Made by a program: the position numbers and the translations under genes
Notes under the pieces: generated by a model
Database searches by the model: none
Told to the model about the DNA's origin: nothing
The model's input: the letters and a program-made list of their open reading frames with translations, nothing else
Assembly (NCBI GenBank): GCA_964035545.1
Contig: OZ037766.1
Coordinates: 7,058,722-7,122,721, forward strand
Direction of reading: 5' to 3'
Length of the DNA stretch: 64,000 nucleotides
Origin: Bugula neritina
Lineage: Eukaryota; Animalia; Bryozoa
Shown: positions 39,831 through 48,968 of the stretch, piece after piece
Layout: each line of letters starts with the position of its first letter
Position numbering within the stretch: the stretch's first letter is position 1

Positions 39831-40070
39831 TTTATTAATCGTGAAGTTGATAAATTTCGGTTTAGGGTGAGGGTAAAGGTTTAAGAATTTAAGAAAACAT
39901 AATTACTTTTTAATATTTTTTATCCAGTACACAGGCTTTTTCACAGGTCTTTACTGTTGCGCCTACTAATAATATATGTTACTGTGTCGCACTTGCATTT
40001 TGATTTTTAATAGAAAACTACCAACATTTATTTACAACTTACACTGCTGGTGCTCATCATAGGCTTAAGC

Positions 40071-43000
40071 ATGAGTGGGGATTCTGAATCGAAGAGAAGT
40101 GTTGGCCACCTTCAACAACCCAGTGAATTAATTCAGGATTTACATTCTATCAATGCCGTGAAGTTTGGTTCATTCAAGCTAAAGTCGGGAATTATGTCTC
40201 CATTCTATTTTGATCTTCGCGCCATGATTTCATACCCAAACACACTGGTTTGTATCACTATGGCCTATCTATTCATCTGCTCTAACTATTTCATTGACTG
40301 TACATCTACAGTTACAATTAATCCAAATTATTAATATTAATAATTGAATCATCTAGTGGTTGCTGGACTTCATGGTTCTGGTATTCATTAAAACAATGCA
40401 CTTGATTATATCTGTGATGATACATCTAGACAATGACCAATAAAGTATTTGGGAAGGTTTATTTTATATAAAGCTTTGCTGCCGCTCTTGAGACATTAGC
40501 TACTGTTCTTTTTATATATATTCAGTCAGCTCATAAAAACTCGTGCGATAGCTAATACTTGCCTTAGTAGAGTGTTTGTAAATGTTTAATGTAAAAAGAG
40601 AAGTTTCTTTTAGCGCATGTGGCTCATTTAACAGACGTGCAAGAACTGTCAACAAAATGTCATTTAATGGAATTCTTTCTTGAAAAATATCTGTTGCTGC
40701 ACCTGGCTGCATTTATATGGCTCATCTTGGTTGTACCTGTTACTAATGTTCAGATTTAGAGCTGTTGACAATGACTTAGTTAGATTTTTTAAAGGAATGT
40801 GGTTTCATGTGCTTAGATTGTTATACACTGTTTTGTTATATGCTATGAGCAAACTATTGTTTGCTTTCTTCCGTCTTCTGACAGTGGGAAATGGGAATCA
40901 ATGCTCTTGATCTAAAGAGTAAATGTTATGATATGAGAACATCATAATAGGAACAATGGAGCTGTTGGGTAAAGCTTTTTGTATTCTTTAAGTAGGCTTG
41001 CAAAATATTAGAGCTCTTCAAGTATAACATTCTATTTAGTTATTATAAGTAGGAAACAGGAAGTGCAATCTGTTGCTCTTCAAATGAGAAAATTGGGCTC
41101 CTTGTAATGTAAATTAGTGTTCCCCTTTGCCACAAGGACCTAAGCTTAGAATTGTAAACTGATATAAAATCACTTTTGTCATTTATCTCTGCCTTATAAA
41201 ATTGTTGAAAGCAAATATATTTTCCTATATGATCTGCAACAATGAAATAACAGAAGAAATGTTCTAGTTACATTGTCAACCTTATACTACTGCAAAGGTC
41301 ATAATACAGAATGGCTAAGTTTGTTTTTTAATGGTTTGTTGAATATATTCGTGAGGTTTAATTGTAAGTTAGTAATATTGATACATTTCTGTTGCAGCTC
41401 AAGGCCTCTGAGCATGTGTATGACATCCTTCGAAACCTGGAATATGAAAGTATATGTGGTGTGCCTTATACAGCATTACCAATAGCAAGTGTAAGTATAC
41501 AGCATTACCAATAGCAAGTGTAAGCATACGCAGTTTGCACTATACAGCATTGTTAATAGTAAATGTAAGTATGTATGCAGTGTACACTATACAGCATTTC
41601 CAATTGCAAGTGTAAATATATTGTATGATGTACACTACGGCATTGCCAATAGGTAGTGTAAGTATATGCAGTGCATCATATGCAACATATCAAGCATGGA
41701 GTTCATCATATTTTTTAAATTTCATTCCTCTAAAGTCTAATCCATATAATTAAGTTAATAGAGTTTATTATCACTCTTCTAGTAGCCAGGTAGTTGTGTA
41801 TTGGTCCAATAATATCAGTGTATGATGGTGTGTGACTAACCTTGCAGTGCATATCAACCATGCATCGTGTTCCGATGCTGCTCAAAAGGAAAGAAGCTAA
41901 AAGTTATGGTACAAAGAAGATGGTAGAAGGCGTGTTTGTAAATGGTGATCGCTGCGTAATCGTTGAGGATGTGGTGACCAGTGGTGGCAGTGTGCTGGAA
42001 ACAGCTGCAGTAAGTCTTTCAATATAATATCTTTTTAAATATCTAGTGTGTTGCAGGATGTTTGAAACACAGGCTATACGTGCCGCAAAGTGAGAAAACA
42101 AATGAAACTACACTGCTGTAGGTGGTTAATTGTCACAACTACAGGGTCATCAGTGAGTGAGTCATTGTCCCGAATTTATTTTCAAGACATGTATGCACAA
42201 AATGTATTATAAAACTAATATGCTTGGGCCTGCTACCCTGGAGCTTTATATAGGTGGTAGTCAAGATATATGCGAGTAATTGAATACTGCATAAAGGTAG
42301 CATGTCAAGGATTCTTTTACTATTATCATGTATATAATGACCATAGACACTATCTGTGTATCTCTATATTCTATAATACAATGAGATTTGATGGTATTTT
42401 TCTTCATTGTATGTGATGTTAGTTTAATGTCTCTACGATGCGTTATAGAGTGATGAGGTCCCGAAAAACTTTGAAATTTGTTGGCCAAAATGGCTGTTTA
42501 AGGGTTTGTTTATAGCTCTGTCATGTTCTAGCATATTTTTATTTCGACACCCATTTGAAATGTAAAAGAATACAAGAAAACTTATCCAAACAAAACTTAC
42601 AAATATTTAACCTCCACCTCTAGCTCTTGAGGCAAAAAATTCCATAGCCCTAAACAGGCATTGTCAGAAAGTATGATTATGTAAGTAAGAGATTGTTATT
42701 TTAGAAGTTCTAGTCAGTGCAGTCTGTCTATCAGATTTTACTGTGAAGTGTTGCTTTAGTGTCTGAAAAGTGAAGGCCTGGTGGTGACAGACGTCATAAC
42801 TATACTAGACAGAGGTCAAGGGGGTCAGAAGAATCTGGAGAACCAGGGTATTACTCTTCACAGGTGGGCGGAGTGTGTCACGGCTTATATTATTGCCTCC
42901 ACCTTCTGCATTAATGTGCATGTGGCATCTATGTTGGTGTATGAAATAACTGGTACATTATAGATCAGACTCAATGGGTTTGCAATTACTTCAAGATTTT

Positions 43001-46000
43001 TATACAACTTAGAAGCTGTTATTTATACAAAATAACAAAATACAAAATAAATGTTGCAAATTATCAAATTTTCTTGCCAACACTCAAATATTTATCAGTT
43101 TGAGTCTTTAAATATTGTTTTTCCATTTCTATCACGTCTAAATGCCTCTTTATATTGCAGCCTCATGTTATTCAATGATTTGTCAGTTTATCACAGTTAA
43201 TGGTATATTTTTGATAAATATGTCACGTAGGACTTTCCTAAATAGCTGTGCGGTTTGACTGTGTGGCTGGTTGTTTTGTCTTCAGTTTATCAAAGTTTGT
43301 TATCAATAGTTTGTTCTGTGGTTGGGATGCTCTAAAGTTATGTTAACCAGGTCACAGCTTTCAAACTTCAAAGGTTTTGTTTAAAATGTCATTATTATTT
43401 CTACACTCTTGCCTTATATAAATATTGTAGTGTATTGTCAATACAGTCCGTGATATCTGCTCTCCTGGAATCAGCCAAGATAACATCTGAGCAGGCAGAG
43501 ATCAGTCTTAACTTTATAGAAACCAATCAGCTGATAAGTAATTCTGTGATTGACCCCATCGAAGACATTGTTCTCCGGCTGCACGATATTGGCTCGTTCA
43601 GATTCGGCAGCTTCAAGTTATCCAATGGGATGATAACTCCCATATATATTGACTTGAGACTCGTCATCTCTCACCCCTCACTTATGGTAGTTTTTATGTT
43701 TATATTTCATGTTTATGTTATCAACTAGTCAAATAAACAGCCCAACTGTACAAAATAATGAACTTGACTGGCATTAATATGTTATTATATTTCCATTTTG
43801 TAGTTCAAAACACTTGTTTATGTGTAGAAACATTTCAAAGATTTGTCAGAGTAGGGATGAAATAGGCTACTATTTTGTTATATATTACATGCTATGCTTC
43901 AATGTATTACTATTCTCAACAGTCGGATATATGCAAGCAGATGTATAAGCTGGTAGAGGGTGTGGTCCAGTTTGATATACTCTGCGGGGTACCCTATGCC
44001 GCCCTTCACCTGGCTACGGTATGTTGAAGCTGTGTCATGGTTTAGTTGATATATTTCCTCTCTGCAATTTCGATTAGCTTCTATGTCCAAATTGTTTTAT
44101 TTATTCAATACTGTTGACGTTTCCGCAATATCTAGCTAGTTTATGCTCAAATCAATTTATCTAGCAAATTATATGGGTTTAAATTGCCTGCAATAGTTTC
44201 AAATACAACTTATTTTTAATTCGAATATATTATGCAGCTGCATATAACTATTATGTACACCAAATTTGGAAAAGGTTTTGGTAGATTCTGTGTAAAAGAT
44301 TACCCCAAACTAATAACTGTTTGCAGTCTCCTTTTTATTGTAATACTTGCATATTATATCTGTTATATTAGACTGCTGTTTTAGTGCATTGCTAATGACC
44401 ACGGGTTGAACAATGTTCTACTGAGAAAGGTGGTGAAGCAGTACGGCACTGGCAAGCTAATAGAAGGCGTCTACAAAGAAGGCCAGAAGTGTTTGGTGGT
44501 GGAAGATGTTATGGTTAGTGGACAGGGAATCTATGAGTCTTGTGAGGTGAGTCACGCCAGTCGTGCGACAAACTTATTTCCTGTAATTCTCAGATTACAC
44601 TGGAAAACCTGCTCCTTGTTTATATAAACATACCTGGTAGGTTTCATTTAGGCATTGGATTTGTTGAGATGAGCGTTTGTAATAGTTGTTTGTATTTGTC
44701 TTTTTTAAAGTCAAATGCCTAGAGTTACAGCAAAGTAAAGTACATCATTTAGCAATGCTGAACAACTTTTATGCAGTTCAATGATAAAACATGCTATTAC
44801 TCAAAATTTCCCCCCTTGCAAAAACTGTTGAGGATTTTTTTTAAAAGAGCATCAGAGTTTTATACAATGTCTTCCTATTGATTATTTATGCAACATGATT
44901 CTCAAAAAAGCTTTCCTATTTACTAATATGTTTTATTATATCAAAATAATTGTCATTTTTAGCCTTTGTGTTCTCTCTAAAAATAGAGACAATTTGAAAC
45001 AACTTTCTGAAACTAAAAACTGATGTAGCTGACATGACTAGATGCTATGTGAAAATCTCAGTCAGCTCGTGTAATATGAAAAGATAATTTCAAATAATTT
45101 ATGCTTTATCTGAGATCTGTATATAATTTATACTGTGCGCAATAATAATACTTTCTAGCACTAGTTAAGGTGTTTGTAACATTTGCCGTTTATTCCTCTA
45201 GAGCTTGAAGTCACAGGGGGTTGAGGCCACAGATGTTCTTTTAGTACTTGATAGAGAGCAGAATGGGGAGAGAAACTTGAAGAAGCAAGGCATCAGGCTG
45301 CACTGGTTAGATTTTCAGTTACTATATATATATATGTTACGCTGACACTATTCTGTTTATATCCGTTGGTGTCAAGGCCAAGCAATAGTTCTTCAGTCAG
45401 AGAAGATACAGTTTCAGATGGATCTTTTCCAAGTTTTGAAAATTGATTTTATTTTATTCCATATAATATAGTTTATTTTCTGATTGCAACATTAACATTT
45501 TTGGTTTTTATGTAAACTAACGCTTGTAAAGTTTTTTCCCCTCTTGTTGCTTGTATTTTATGCACTCTCCGTTATACTTTACCAATGTGATCGAATTAAC
45601 TTCCGTTGTTGATAGCTTAATTCGAGTGTCGGAGGCATTGGATATCCTGTTGAAGCATAAGCGTATTGACGCGGAGCTATCTAATGAAGTGATGCGTTTC
45701 CTGAAGGCAAACCCTGCAAACATTCCATTTAGCAAGGCAGAAGATCATCAACGAACTAGCCAAATTAACAAGGTGAACAACTTGCATCCAGATTGACTGG
45801 AATATTTGGTTCTCTATACTTTGAATAGTGCTTTTGCTGTGACTTAGTGATTGCTGTCATACAACTCCTTATGCTTTAGCTGCTGCCTTTCACTGAGAGA
45901 GCTGCCCTGTGCTCCAACCCAGTCTCCAAGAAGCTGTTTACTATAATGCATGAGAAGCACACCAACCTGTGCTTGTCTGCTGATGTTACCACTGTTGACA

Positions 46001-48968
46001 TGTTACTCAAGGTGAGTGTAATACCTGTTGATGTCACTTTACTGGAGATAGTTAGTGTGTTAGCTGTTGACAATTTTGAAATAGGCCATTACTGCTGTCG
46101 AATTACCAGATAACGATAATTGTTTCTTCTAACTAGAATCTCTCACACCCTTGAGCATCTTGTATAACATTCTGTTTATTCTGTCCACGTGTCATTTCGC
46201 AATAAAACTTCCCTTTGGTAAAAATCAAAGTATACTAAAATTCACTATGTTCTGAAAGAAAACCTAATAGTTGCGGGACATCAATTCACATGGCTGATTT
46301 CCACTCACATTTACCTGTAGTGGTATCTTATTGTTTTTCTCTCACATTTTTAACCAACACTTCTGGCAAAGTTGCAGCCGAATGTAAATACAATCAAATG
46401 TAGGATCTGGTTGCTGCAACTACTTTTTAGCGGAATGGTAAATACTTCTCCTTGTGATCAAGGACTGGATATATGTTAGAACATCTGTATAAGTCATAAT
46501 TAACTATAAAATTGAGGTTGCTTGTAGCCAAGTTGTTAACTGCTAAGTAATTGGTGCAGTGTTGTGGAAGTCTTCTGCCATATAACACTTTGTACTAATT
46601 ATTAGAGAGCTTGATATTTGCTGGAATTTGCTCAACATAATATATGTGCCCCAGTAATGTGCATTTTATAATGAAAGAGGACACAACTCCAAAGTATATG
46701 CATGGTGTGTGGTTTACTATATCCTGCAGTAGTTGGGAGGAGGTCCTCAGTTAGCAGACTCTTCATCTCAGTTTGTCCTTTACAGCTGGCAGATCAAGTT
46801 GGCCCACACATCTGTATGCTTAAGACTCATGTTGACATTTTGGAAGATTTTACGCCTGCGGCCGTCGCTCAGCTGGTTGAATTGTCGCAAAAACATAACT
46901 TTGTGATATTTGAAGACCGGTATGTAAACTTTCACATGTAGATTCTATCCGCTAACCAGTAAAGTGAATAAGATTTCTATGTGATGCAGTCACTAGTTTG
47001 AGGTCAAGTTTATAACAAAGTGAAGCTGTAGAATGTAAACTCTAGCATTTTGGAGATGTTCAGCTGTTACTCTTGTGTTCATTATTTTATTTAAGCTAGT
47101 TTCTAAAATTATTTATAGAATATCTCAAACTTGCAATAGAGAGACTTTCGGTGCATATGACTGCTAGCTGCATTTGCCCAGGCATTTTGATTCTGTTAAC
47201 CAATTTTGTCTGAAATGTGGATTTTTGTTGCTTTTCACAAAAGAATACATATTGCAAGTTTTTATTGAAACACATGTTTTTTAAACTCTTTTAATGCTAC
47301 ACTTGTGAGATTGAGATTTATTTTATAACATATACATCATGGTATGATTTGCAGTGCATAAAACATTATTTTAGTCTTAGTCAAAATTAGAAAATGGCTG
47401 AAGTTAGCTGCATATTTTATTCATCCAAACAGGAAGTTCAGTGACATCGGCTCGACAGTGAAGCAGCAATACGCAGGAGGGTTATACAAGATAGCTGACT
47501 GGTCTGAAGTAACTACTGCTCATTCTATTCCTGGACCTGGCATTGTGCAAGCACTGCAGGCTGTGAGTTTGTCTACTAATAGACTACTTCGTAGTAGAAT
47601 AAAAAAATGTATTTTCTACACCAATAAACATGTGAATGTACAGAGTTGGTCTTTGTACTACAGCCGTGTCATTGTGTCCTGTAGGTTGGCTCTCCGAAAG
47701 GTCGTGCTTGTGTCTTACTGGCTGAAATGAGCTCTAAAGGAAACCTTACCAATGCTAGCTACTCTGTTGGTAAGGTGTTTCCCAACACTCGCCTTTCTAT
47801 CTAATTATACTCTTTAAATATTTGTTTTTATTTTTTTTTAATATCACAAGAATGTGTCCTGTCAACTATCTTTTTGAAACATAATAATTGTATTGTTGCA
47901 CATTAATATGTGAAGCTTTCTCAGTTAGCTGGAGCTGCTATTTACTAGATGTACTATCAGCTGGTAGTCTTTGGAATTGTTGAATGAAAGCAAAAAAGTC
48001 ATCTTTCAGCTACAATGGTTGGCGAGTTTTAATGATATCTAGTTTTACAATTGCAGTGTGGAAGTTTGTAACTTGTTGGTTTTGATTGTAGCTACAGTGA
48101 ACATGGCAAGAGAGTACAGTGACTTTGTTATTGGATTTATCTCCCAGTCTAAACTGACCTCTGACCCCACTCTGCTGCACATGACTCCTGGTGAGACTTT
48201 CTACCCTCTAGTCTACGTGTTGAACTCCACTAGCTAAATACAACTTCATTTGTGTCTCTTGCATTTCATTGCCCATCGAAAAGTGTGTTGGTTAGCTATA
48301 GGTCTTGTAGTTTAAGACAGAAATAGGTAAATATATGTGTGTTTTGTGTGTGTATGTACCTACATATTATACAGATAGTACATGCTACCTGCATAGATAG
48401 TATATACTACCTGCATAGATAGTATATACTACCTGCATATATTTATATACTACCTGCATATGTTATGTGTATTTGTTTATTCATGTTTCAAGAATATGAT
48501 AGGGCATTCATTAGAAATAGCTGGAATATTTCTTGGTATATAGAAACTATAAAATTAGCTATATTTGGGCGTTTATTTCTGACATGGACATGTAGTGAAA
48601 CATGTTTAGTTTATTGAACTGATGTATCAAAATCTACTACTTTGAGCACATAATATGTGCAAAAGTTTGTCTAATTTGCCCATATTGCTGTTCAGGTAAT
48701 TCACAGGTACTGCAGTCAAACGCCTATCACAACACAGATGGTTTATACCTGCTGTATTGTAGGAGTGAAAAATACTGATAAAGGTGACAACTTGGGTCAG
48801 CAGTACGTCAATGCTGCCGATGCCGTGATGTTACGTGGTGCTGACATCATCATTGTTGGACGAGGAATAACTCAGGCAGCCGACCCAGTTGCTGCCGCTA
48901 TTGAGTATAAGAATCTAGGATACGAATCTTATGAGAATTTTAGAACTCAGCAGAAATCTGACGAGTGA
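40071..48968 (+). CDS. UMPS: UMP synthase with tandem duplicated OPRTase domains (OPRT-OPRT-ODC, ~698 aa), 15 exons
   Basis: Exons 40071-40247, 41398-41490, 41848-42009, 42760-42863, 43431-43686, 43923-44018, 44385-44546, 45202-45305, 45616-45772, 45880-46011, 46786-46919, 47433-47562, 47685-47769, 48092-48190, 48763-48968 (2097 nt, open frame). OPRT1: [47 protein letters not shown]2: [46 protein letters not shown]: [39 protein letters not shown]. Confidence 0.95.
41467..41670 (+). repeat. Tandem repeat of the UMPS exon-2 end plus donor (TATACAGCATTACCAATAGCAAGTGTAAG), ~5 decaying copies
   Basis: The first unit spans the exon/intron boundary at 41490/41491, the second is exact, and later copies are diverged. 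Confidence 0.88.
48372..48460. repeat. 22-bp minisatellite (AGATAGTATATACTACCTGCAT) x~4
   Basis: Directly visible in the last UMPS intron. Confidence 0.85.

What the first reader, a model, noticed from the sequence alone, without database searches (positions are those of the whole stretch)
40071..45772. UMP synthase with two tandem OPRTase domains (OPRT-OPRT-ODC)
Seen in sequence: one open spliced frame carries a complete OPRT, a second complete OPRT, then an intact ODC. Exon 5 (43431-43686) joins the tail of OPRT1 to the start of OPRT2 with no stop codon. The duplicated exon blocks measure 93/162/104 nt and 96/162/104 nt with identical intron positions and phases. Established: animal UMPS is a two-domain OPRT-ODC protein of about 480 aa. 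Inference: an old intragenic DNA-level duplication produced a three-domain enzyme, retained because both copies are open despite strong divergence. I know of no description of this architecture in animals but could not search for one.
Basis: partly seen in the sequence, partly recalled or inferred. Interest (0 to 1): 0.92.

Follow-up and report, generated by a model that had tools for sequence, protein, structure and literature searches.

The report
Bryozoan UMP synthase with doubled OPRT
The bryozoan Bugula makes its pyrimidine enzyme UMP synthase with two copies of the first domain instead of one; the extra copy is old, strongly conserved and has a rebuilt substrate pocket, so it probably serves as a built-in partner or sensor for the working copy, not as a second catalyst.

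Summary
Confirmed. The gene (window 40071-48968, 15 exons, Bugula neritina complex) encodes an open 698-aa OPRT1-OPRT2-ODC protein. It is the genome's only UMPS. RNA contigs from four studies show all nine joints of exons 1-10, and one contig runs from exon 1 into ODC. All four OPRT1 introns recur at the same codon and phase in OPRT2, so this is a DNA-level duplication. Five other lineages carry the junction in genomic fragments, and a distant 709-aa transcript has the full architecture. OPRT2 departs from 14 of 60 conserved OPRT columns in all lineages covered (OPRT1: 1), mostly in its own orotate/PRPP pocket, but keeps the loop residues that act on a partner subunit. It is more conserved than OPRT1 (0 replacement, 17 silent changes between two Bugula assemblies). 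Best reading: a pseudo-enzyme partner for OPRT1, possibly also a ligand sensor; this is inferred, not assayed. I found no paper describing it. In passing: the mRNA carries a 5' leader encoded on other contigs, a candidate for spliced-leader trans-splicing.

The parts
40063..40070 (+). 5' UTR remnant after a splice acceptor (AG at 40061-40062) that receives a leader not encoded upstream in the window
   Evidence: loose 5' ends in three RNA runs; junction bases; leader genes on other contigs
40071..40247 (+). exon 1: start codon and OPRT1 hood (K38, S39 intact)
41398..41490 (+). exon 2: OPRT1 core, canonical PYTALP
41848..42009 (+). exon 3: OPRT1 catalytic loop (R104, K105, K108, Y110) and canonical PRPP motif (E130, D131, T134, S138)
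42760..42863 (+). exon 4: OPRT1, ends in phase 2
43431..43686 (+). exon 5: OPRT1 C-terminal helices, a linker of about 8 residues, and the OPRT2 hood (K to S243, S to N244, S to T248)
43923..44018 (+). exon 6: OPRT2 core (T to A290, P to H293)
44385..44546 (+). exon 7: OPRT2 loop keeping R310, K314, Y316, G317; PRPP motif keeping E336-D337 but with T to V340 and S to G344
45202..45305 (+). exon 8: OPRT2, keeps D367-R368
45616..45772 (+). exon 9: OPRT2 C-terminal helices and linker to ODC
45880..48968 (+). exons 10-15 (45880-46011, 46786-46919, 47433-47562, 47685-47769, 48092-48190, 48763-48968): ODC domain with intact catalytic D-x-K-x-x-D motif, and stop codon
   Evidence: RNA joints shown directly only up to exon 10-11

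Best explanation
The gene is the animal's single UMP synthase. In an ancestor, the exons of the OPRT domain were duplicated in place (shown). OPRT1 kept the canonical pocket and makes OMP from orotate and PRPP, and ODC makes UMP (inferred from intact motifs). OPRT2 changed fast, then froze (shown). It lost much of its own orotate and PRPP 5'-phosphate pocket but kept the loop residues that in OPRT dimers close over the neighbour's site (shown at sequence level). It most likely acts as a dedicated, catalytically dead or crippled partner that pairs with OPRT1, completes its site and occupies the OPRT dimer face (inferred). Each chain would then hold one working transferase site, and the ODC dimer would give a closed two-chain enzyme instead of the open polymer that human UMPS forms through OPRT-OPRT contacts (inferred).
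For: One mRNA and only two OPRT and one ODC matches in the genome, all in this gene. Of 60 columns at least 85% conserved among 67 diverse OPRTs, OPRT2 departs in all covered lineages at 14 and OPRT1 at 1. Lost: the K26-equivalent and the next Ser, the Thr of PYTALP, two hydroxyls of the PRPP loop. Kept in every lineage that covers the loop: the R99, K103, Y/H105 and G equivalents. K26 binds orotate/OMP and PRPP, and K103 acts on the adjacent subunit (PMC10087573). In the most distant lineage (P0294) the pattern is reciprocal: OPRT2 has also lost the K100-equivalent, while OPRT1's loop has R to H and G to E. OPRT2 clade 100/100 with a stem of 1.65 and end branches of 0.05-0.15 in the four closer lineages. 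Purifying selection: 17 silent and 0 replacement changes. AlphaFold2 of the P0294 tandem: pLDDT 91, pTM 0.89, both domains folded and packed with confidence, best match human OPRT 2WNS. Human UMPS dimerises by ODC and polymerises through OPRT contacts (PMC9978035).
Against: No activity was measured. E336-D337 and D367-R368 are kept. Single changes have active precedents: Ser at the K26 position in Bacillus 3M3H and PYAAL in Leishmania 3QW4. OPRT1's own loop is intact in five of six lineages, which a dead partner site would not require. A purely structural partner does not explain 89-96% identity of the OPRT2 hood. PMC9978035 reports human OPRT active without dimerising, which would make a loop donor unnecessary.
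Confidence: 0.5

Rival explanations
1. OPRT2 is mainly an allosteric sensor: its rebuilt pocket binds a nucleotide or PRPP without turnover and tunes OPRT1, as PRTase-fold regulators such as PyrR and PurR do. This can coexist with the partner role.
For: The new residues (N244, T248, H293, V340, G344) are fixed in every lineage that covers them, not drifting; the hood that lines the base pocket is the most conserved part; OPRT1's loop, which would close on this site, is mostly intact; the acidic pair and the base-binding Arg are kept.
Against: No ligand identified. Losing two hydroxyls of the 5'-phosphate loop should weaken nucleotide binding. NCBIfam gives OPRT2 only pyrE-type best matches, no regulator family.
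Confidence: 0.27
2. OPRT2 is an active enzyme, either an OPRT with altered kinetics or a phosphoribosyltransferase for another base.
For: E336-D337, R310, K311, K314 and R368 are kept in Bugula; some of its changes occur singly in active OPRTs; selection is strong.
Against: Several of the changes (S243, H293, V340, G344) were absent from all 67 reference OPRTs and they occur together. OPRT2 scores below the TIGR00336 cut-off (102.8 and 91.5 against 106.8) where P0294's OPRT1 passes (135.6). P0294's OPRT1 loop, which would have to serve this site, is degenerate.
Confidence: 0.12
3. The short linker forbids pairing within one chain, so OPRT1 and OPRT2 pair between chains and, with the ODC dimer, build tetramers or filaments; OPRT2 is an assembly module.
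For: Exon 5 keeps the same length in the five other lineages with genomic fragments, leaving a linker of about 8 residues. Human and Leishmania UMPS are regulated by oligomer state (PMC9978035).
Against: The P0294 linker is long and disordered in a confident single-chain model. No geometry could be measured.
Confidence: 0.1
4. Assembly or annotation artefact, two genes, or exons 5-8 normally skipped (exon 4 and exon 9 are both phase 2, so skipping would give an ordinary 492-aa UMPS).
For: The skip is possible in frame, and contigs drop rare isoforms.
Against: Same structure in a second assembly; all joints in four RNA studies and no exon 4 to 9 joint listed; six other lineages.
Confidence: 0.01

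Closest known systems
Animal and plant UMP synthase (OPRT-ODC, about 480 aa; human OPRT structure 2WNS)
   Same: Domain order OPRT then ODC; OPRT1 and ODC motifs canonical; both OPRT copies are of the eukaryote type and closest to 2WNS.
   Different: A second, full-length, remodelled OPRT lies between OPRT1 and ODC. No such chain in the PDB or ESM Atlas searches.
Bacterial and yeast OPRT homodimers with shared active sites (E. coli 1ORO, Salmonella 1LH0, yeast 2PS1)
   Same: The loop with K103 closes on the adjacent subunit (PMC10087573); OPRT2 keeps those residues.
   Different: Here the two partners are unequal and on one chain. It resembles the laboratory K103A plus D125N complementing heterodimers of Ozturk et al. 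1995 (from memory, not read here).
C. elegans umps-1 plus stand-alone OPRT R12E2.11
   Same: An animal with two OPRT domains and one ODC (PMC12811246). From memory (Kim 2009, Levitte 2010; not readable here) the ODC-linked OPRT is the weak one, which would parallel OPRT2.
   Different: Two genes in the worm, one chain here; no evidence of common origin was tested.
PRTase-fold regulators (PyrR, PurR)
   Same: A PRTase fold with an altered site that could sense nucleotides (own knowledge).
   Different: OPRT2 is a direct duplicate of an OPRT inside an enzyme and matches no regulator family.
Annotated OPRT-ODC-OPRT-ODC proteins of Eleusine and Caranx (P0285, P0286, P0411, P0412)
   Same: Two OPRT domains in one predicted chain.
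   Different: Whole-gene tandem copies, probably fused by annotation (separate 469 and 475-aa models exist in the same Eleusine cluster); no OPRT-OPRT junction.

Membership tests
UMP synthase (OPRT-ODC) | OPRT domain and ODC domain on one polypeptide, OPRT first | tested here: met
   open spliced frame, single RNA contig, Pfam and NCBIfam on P0294 and P0400
UMP synthase (OPRT-ODC) | two domains, about 480 aa | tested here: not met
   698 aa, three domains
UMP synthase (OPRT-ODC) | ODC catalytic K and D-x-K-x-x-D motif | tested here: met
   motifs at aa 493 and 523; TIGR01740 above cut-off
UMP synthase (OPRT-ODC) | converts orotate and PRPP to UMP | not testable with these tools
   needs an assay; it is the genome's only OPRT and ODC locus
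Active OPRT (pyrE type), domain OPRT1 | canonical hood, PYTALP, catalytic loop and PRPP motif | tested here: met
   1 conservative departure in 60 conserved columns
Active OPRT (pyrE type), domain OPRT2 | type I PRTase fold with hood | tested here: met
   AlphaFold2 model of the P0294 orthologue with matching secondary structure in both domains
Active OPRT (pyrE type), domain OPRT2 | hood K-S and PRPP 5'-phosphate loop hydroxyls | tested here: not met
   S243, N244, V340, G344 in every lineage that covers them; below TIGR00336 cut-off
Active OPRT (pyrE type), domain OPRT2 | acidic pair of the PRPP motif and loop R, K, Y/H acting on the partner | tested here: met
   E336-D337, R310, K314, Y316 kept
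Single-chain pseudo-heterodimer | OPRT1 and OPRT2 of one chain share the canonical dimer face | tested here: inconclusive
   pTM 0.89 for P0294, but no coordinates, a thin alignment on OPRT2, and the short Bugula linker not modelled
PyrR/PurR-like PRTase-fold regulator | binds nucleotide effector without turnover | not testable with these tools
   no family match; needs binding assays

The most novel reading that the evidence does not exclude
Bryozoans as a whole carry a UMP synthase whose second OPRT is a pseudo-enzyme, fixed for hundreds of millions of years, that both completes the first domain's active site within the chain and binds a nucleotide effector in a rebuilt pocket: a built-in allosteric control of the last steps of pyrimidine synthesis not known in any other animal.
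Probability: 0.25. Interest if true: 0.82.

Novelty: new variant of a known kind. Interest (0 to 1): 0.66.

Why it matters
UMPS architecture is nearly fixed in animals, and two questions about it are open: whether the animal OPRT domain needs a partner to work, and how a protein with two dimerising domains avoids or uses polymerisation (PMC9978035). This gene is a natural asymmetric construct in which each half can be mutated on its own, so both questions become directly testable. The junction exon is also a rare genomic character for bryozoan phylogeny, and the public B. neritina model needs correcting (it lacks exons 1, 2 and 13).

Tried and rejected
Following the operators' note, the joined 698-aa model was never sent to a search, family or folding tool; it was built and compared only inside local scripts, and searches used single exons by reference or natural proteins returned by tools. 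A homolog search anchored on a plant UMPS returned only plants. Single-sequence AlphaFold failed (pLDDT 37). I could not force ordinary OPRT rows onto both domains of one alignment. Paper searches for a duplicated OPRT or bryozoan UMPS found nothing relevant; the library lacks most subscription papers. The organism of SRR17902662 could not be identified. Grubmeyer 2012, Wang 2012 and Levitte 2010 were not held. No annotated protein of Watersipora or another bryozoan was returned, which is a gap and not evidence of absence. Rejected: pseudogene (selection, RNA), assembly artefact (second assembly), retro-insertion of the extra domain (four shared introns), use of RNA depth to infer an internal promoter (contig depth cannot show it). 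The human dimer-face positions S87 and Q90 differ in both copies but vary among ordinary OPRTs, so they were not used.
Full report
Observation. The region holds a 15-exon gene on the + strand from 40071 to 48968. All 14 introns are GT-AG and the spliced frame is open for 698 aa. Residues 14-212 and 219-418 are two OPRT domains, 39% identical, and 438-690 is an ODC with intact catalytic motifs. The whole genome gives two OPRT matches and one ODC match, all inside this gene. The joined model was used only in local scripts; searches went exon by exon or through natural proteins.

Transcription. RNA contigs from four separate studies show all nine joints among exons 1-10, including exon 4 to 5 and exon 8 to 9. 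One 2428-nt contig of run X7 covers exons 1-10 and runs on into exon 11. No exon 4 to 9 joint was listed, though that skip would be in frame and contigs drop rare forms. The RNA is about 95% alike to the window, so it comes from another strain or cryptic species, and the runs are marked RNA by guess; the joints at GT-AG ends speak for spliced RNA.

Organism. The model matches KAF6036080.1, UMPS of Bugula neritina, at 559 of 572 residues. That public model starts at M95 and lacks exons 1, 2 and 13, but all 15 exons are present and open in its assembly GCA_010799875.2. The window is therefore from the B. neritina species complex.

Distribution. Exon 5, which spans the domain junction, found relatives at 62-67% identity. 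Their contigs give five further lineages: B (L003, L005, L022, with an extra intron inside exon 5), C (L008, L009, L019), D (L016), E (L017) and F (L021, OPRT1, OPRT2 and the start of ODC on one contig). Lineage C comes from records labelled BRYA16, which I take to be the North Pacific plastic metagenomes dominated by encrusting bryozoans (PMC5069773; the link is inferred from the label). A sixth, P0294 from run SRR17902662, is a complete 709-aa OPRT-OPRT-ODC on an intron-free contig, only 44% and 55% identical in the two OPRT domains. Its organism is unknown. None of the roughly 250 other OPRT-containing proteins retrieved had an OPRT-OPRT junction, but few animals were among them, so I cannot say the architecture is confined to, or universal in, bryozoans.

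Evolution. OPRT2 sequences form a clade (100/100) on a long stem of 1.65 changes per site, with end branches of 0.05-0.15 in the four closer lineages; OPRT1 end branches in the closer lineages are 0.13-0.51. Both sit in an unresolved group with animal OPRTs. OPRT2 is closer to the window than OPRT1 in every lineage: 78 against 62%, 88/65, 90/58, 77/61 and 55/44 (some rows partial). The excess is mostly in the N-terminal half, since exons 7-8 against 3-4 show no difference for lineage F. Between the two Bugula assemblies OPRT2 has 17 silent and 0 replacement changes, OPRT1 27 and 5, ODC 21 and 8 (OPRT2 against ODC p = 0.02, against OPRT1 p = 0.15). This is a burst of change followed by strong constraint, not decay.

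What changed. Among 60 columns at least 85% conserved in 67 diverse OPRTs, OPRT2 differs in every covered lineage at 14 and OPRT1 at one. The OPRT2 changes cluster in its own pocket: K to S243 and S to N244 in the hood, T to A290 and P to H293, and T to V340 and S to G344 in the PRPP loop. It keeps E336-D337, D367-R368 and the loop residues R310, K314, Y316 and G317. In bacterial OPRT, K26 binds orotate/OMP and PRPP while K103 reaches into the adjacent subunit (PMC10087573); mapping of other Salmonella numbers, and K100 acting in its own subunit, rest on my own knowledge. In P0294 the split goes further: OPRT2 has lost the K100-equivalent and OPRT1's loop has R to H and G to E. Caveats: Ser at the K26 position and PYAAL each occur in active OPRTs, and OPRT1's loop is intact in five of six lineages.

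Structure. AlphaFold2 on P0294 residues 1-445 gave pLDDT 91 and pTM 0.89, with two OPRT folds and a disordered linker, best matching human 2WNS. A pTM that high implies confident packing of the two domains, but I had no coordinates to confirm the canonical dimer face, only four alignment rows covered OPRT2, and the Bugula linker (about 8 residues) is much shorter than the modelled one (about 35).

Mechanism. The best-supported reading is that OPRT1 and ODC are the catalysts and OPRT2 is a crippled, dedicated partner that lends its loop and fills the OPRT dimer face (0.5). Human UMPS dimerises through ODC and forms inactive polymers through OPRT-OPRT contacts (PMC9978035); a built-in partner would close that chain. 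The same paper reports human OPRT active without dimerising, which weakens the need for a loop donor. An active or re-specified enzyme (0.12), pairing between chains (0.1) and artefact (0.01) follow. None of the functional steps was tested experimentally.

Comparison and novelty. It works like a UMP synthase and meets the defining domain content, but not the two-domain architecture; OPRT2 fails the active-site test for a canonical OPRT. I found no paper on this architecture, in a library that lacks most subscription journals. The nearest parallel is C. elegans, with umps-1 and a separate OPRT-only gene (PMC12811246). An earlier first-reader note on this same DNA (s1-472353) proposed the pseudo-dimer; I had written the same idea down before seeing it, so it is agreement, not independent support. 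Verdict: real, expressed, old and conserved; a new variant of a known enzyme; interest 0.66.

Side finding. Three RNA runs show 15-23 extra bases at the 5' end that are not encoded in the 15 kb upstream in the window or the 8 kb upstream in the second assembly. They join at the AG at 40061-40062. A family of 29 matches to a roughly 190-nt element carries or flanks this sequence, which is followed by a GT donor in the C8 copies aligned; the copies cluster on contigs C8, C3 and C5, with none on the gene's contig C2, and the aligned C8 copies share an upstream motif. Four further copies hold only the roughly 70-nt leader, and two of those examined lead straight into an ATG. The element folds better than shuffles (z -2.85), matches no Rfam family and shows no classical Sm site that I could see. 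This is a good candidate for spliced-leader trans-splicing, for which I found no report in bryozoans. It rests on one acceptor gene so far and deserves its own follow-up.

Noticed in passing
window 40061-40070; G000:C8:11.85-13.14 Mb, C3:31.46-31.63 Mb, C5:8.08-8.32 Mb (L053, L054, L057, L063-L068): Candidate spliced-leader trans-splicing in a bryozoan. The UMPS mRNA carries a 5' leader not encoded upstream; 29 matches to a roughly 190-nt element on other contigs, in which the leader (about 70 nt) ends at a GT donor and follows a shared upstream motif in the C8 copies aligned. No Rfam match, no obvious Sm site, no literature found. Shown for one acceptor gene only.
   Followed up: partly
G000:C1:13822982-13823051 (L055), C1:19052657-19052726 (L050), C5:10536234-10536299 (L070), C9:170650-170719: Four copies hold the leader alone without its donor; the two on C1 run straight into similar ATG-started frames and lie next to AT-rich microsatellite-like DNA. 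They look like retrocopies of leader-bearing mRNAs or a mobile element that captured the leader.
   Followed up: no
window about 32.5-37.6 kb, minus strand (by alignment with L034:1-5184): A Piwi/Argonaute gene (Piwi_N, PAZ, Piwi; 958 aa in the GCA annotation) lies head-to-head with UMPS, its start about 2.5-3 kb from the UMPS start codon.
   Followed up: no
L034 / KAF6036080.1: The public B. neritina UMPS model lacks exons 1, 2 and 13 and five residues of exon 8, although all are intact in that assembly.
   Followed up: yes
L003:10159, L017:171-172, L021:3642-3643: Intron gain and loss among relatives: lineage B has an extra intron inside exon 5, E lacks the exon 3-4 intron, F lacks the exon 5-6 intron.
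   Followed up: partly
window 41460-41680: The exon 2 donor region is repeated several times, degenerate, just downstream in intron 2; RNA uses the first donor (41490).
   Followed up: partly
window 42066-42231: RNA contigs from elsewhere in the transcriptome match two short stretches of intron 3 with unrelated flanks, suggesting a dispersed repeat.
   Followed up: no
P0098, P0337, P0367, P0369, P0378: Other fusions seen among search hits: long N-terminal extensions, several with dihydroorotate dehydrogenase electron-transfer domains, joined to OPRT or OPRT-ODC in metagenomic bacteria.
   Followed up: no
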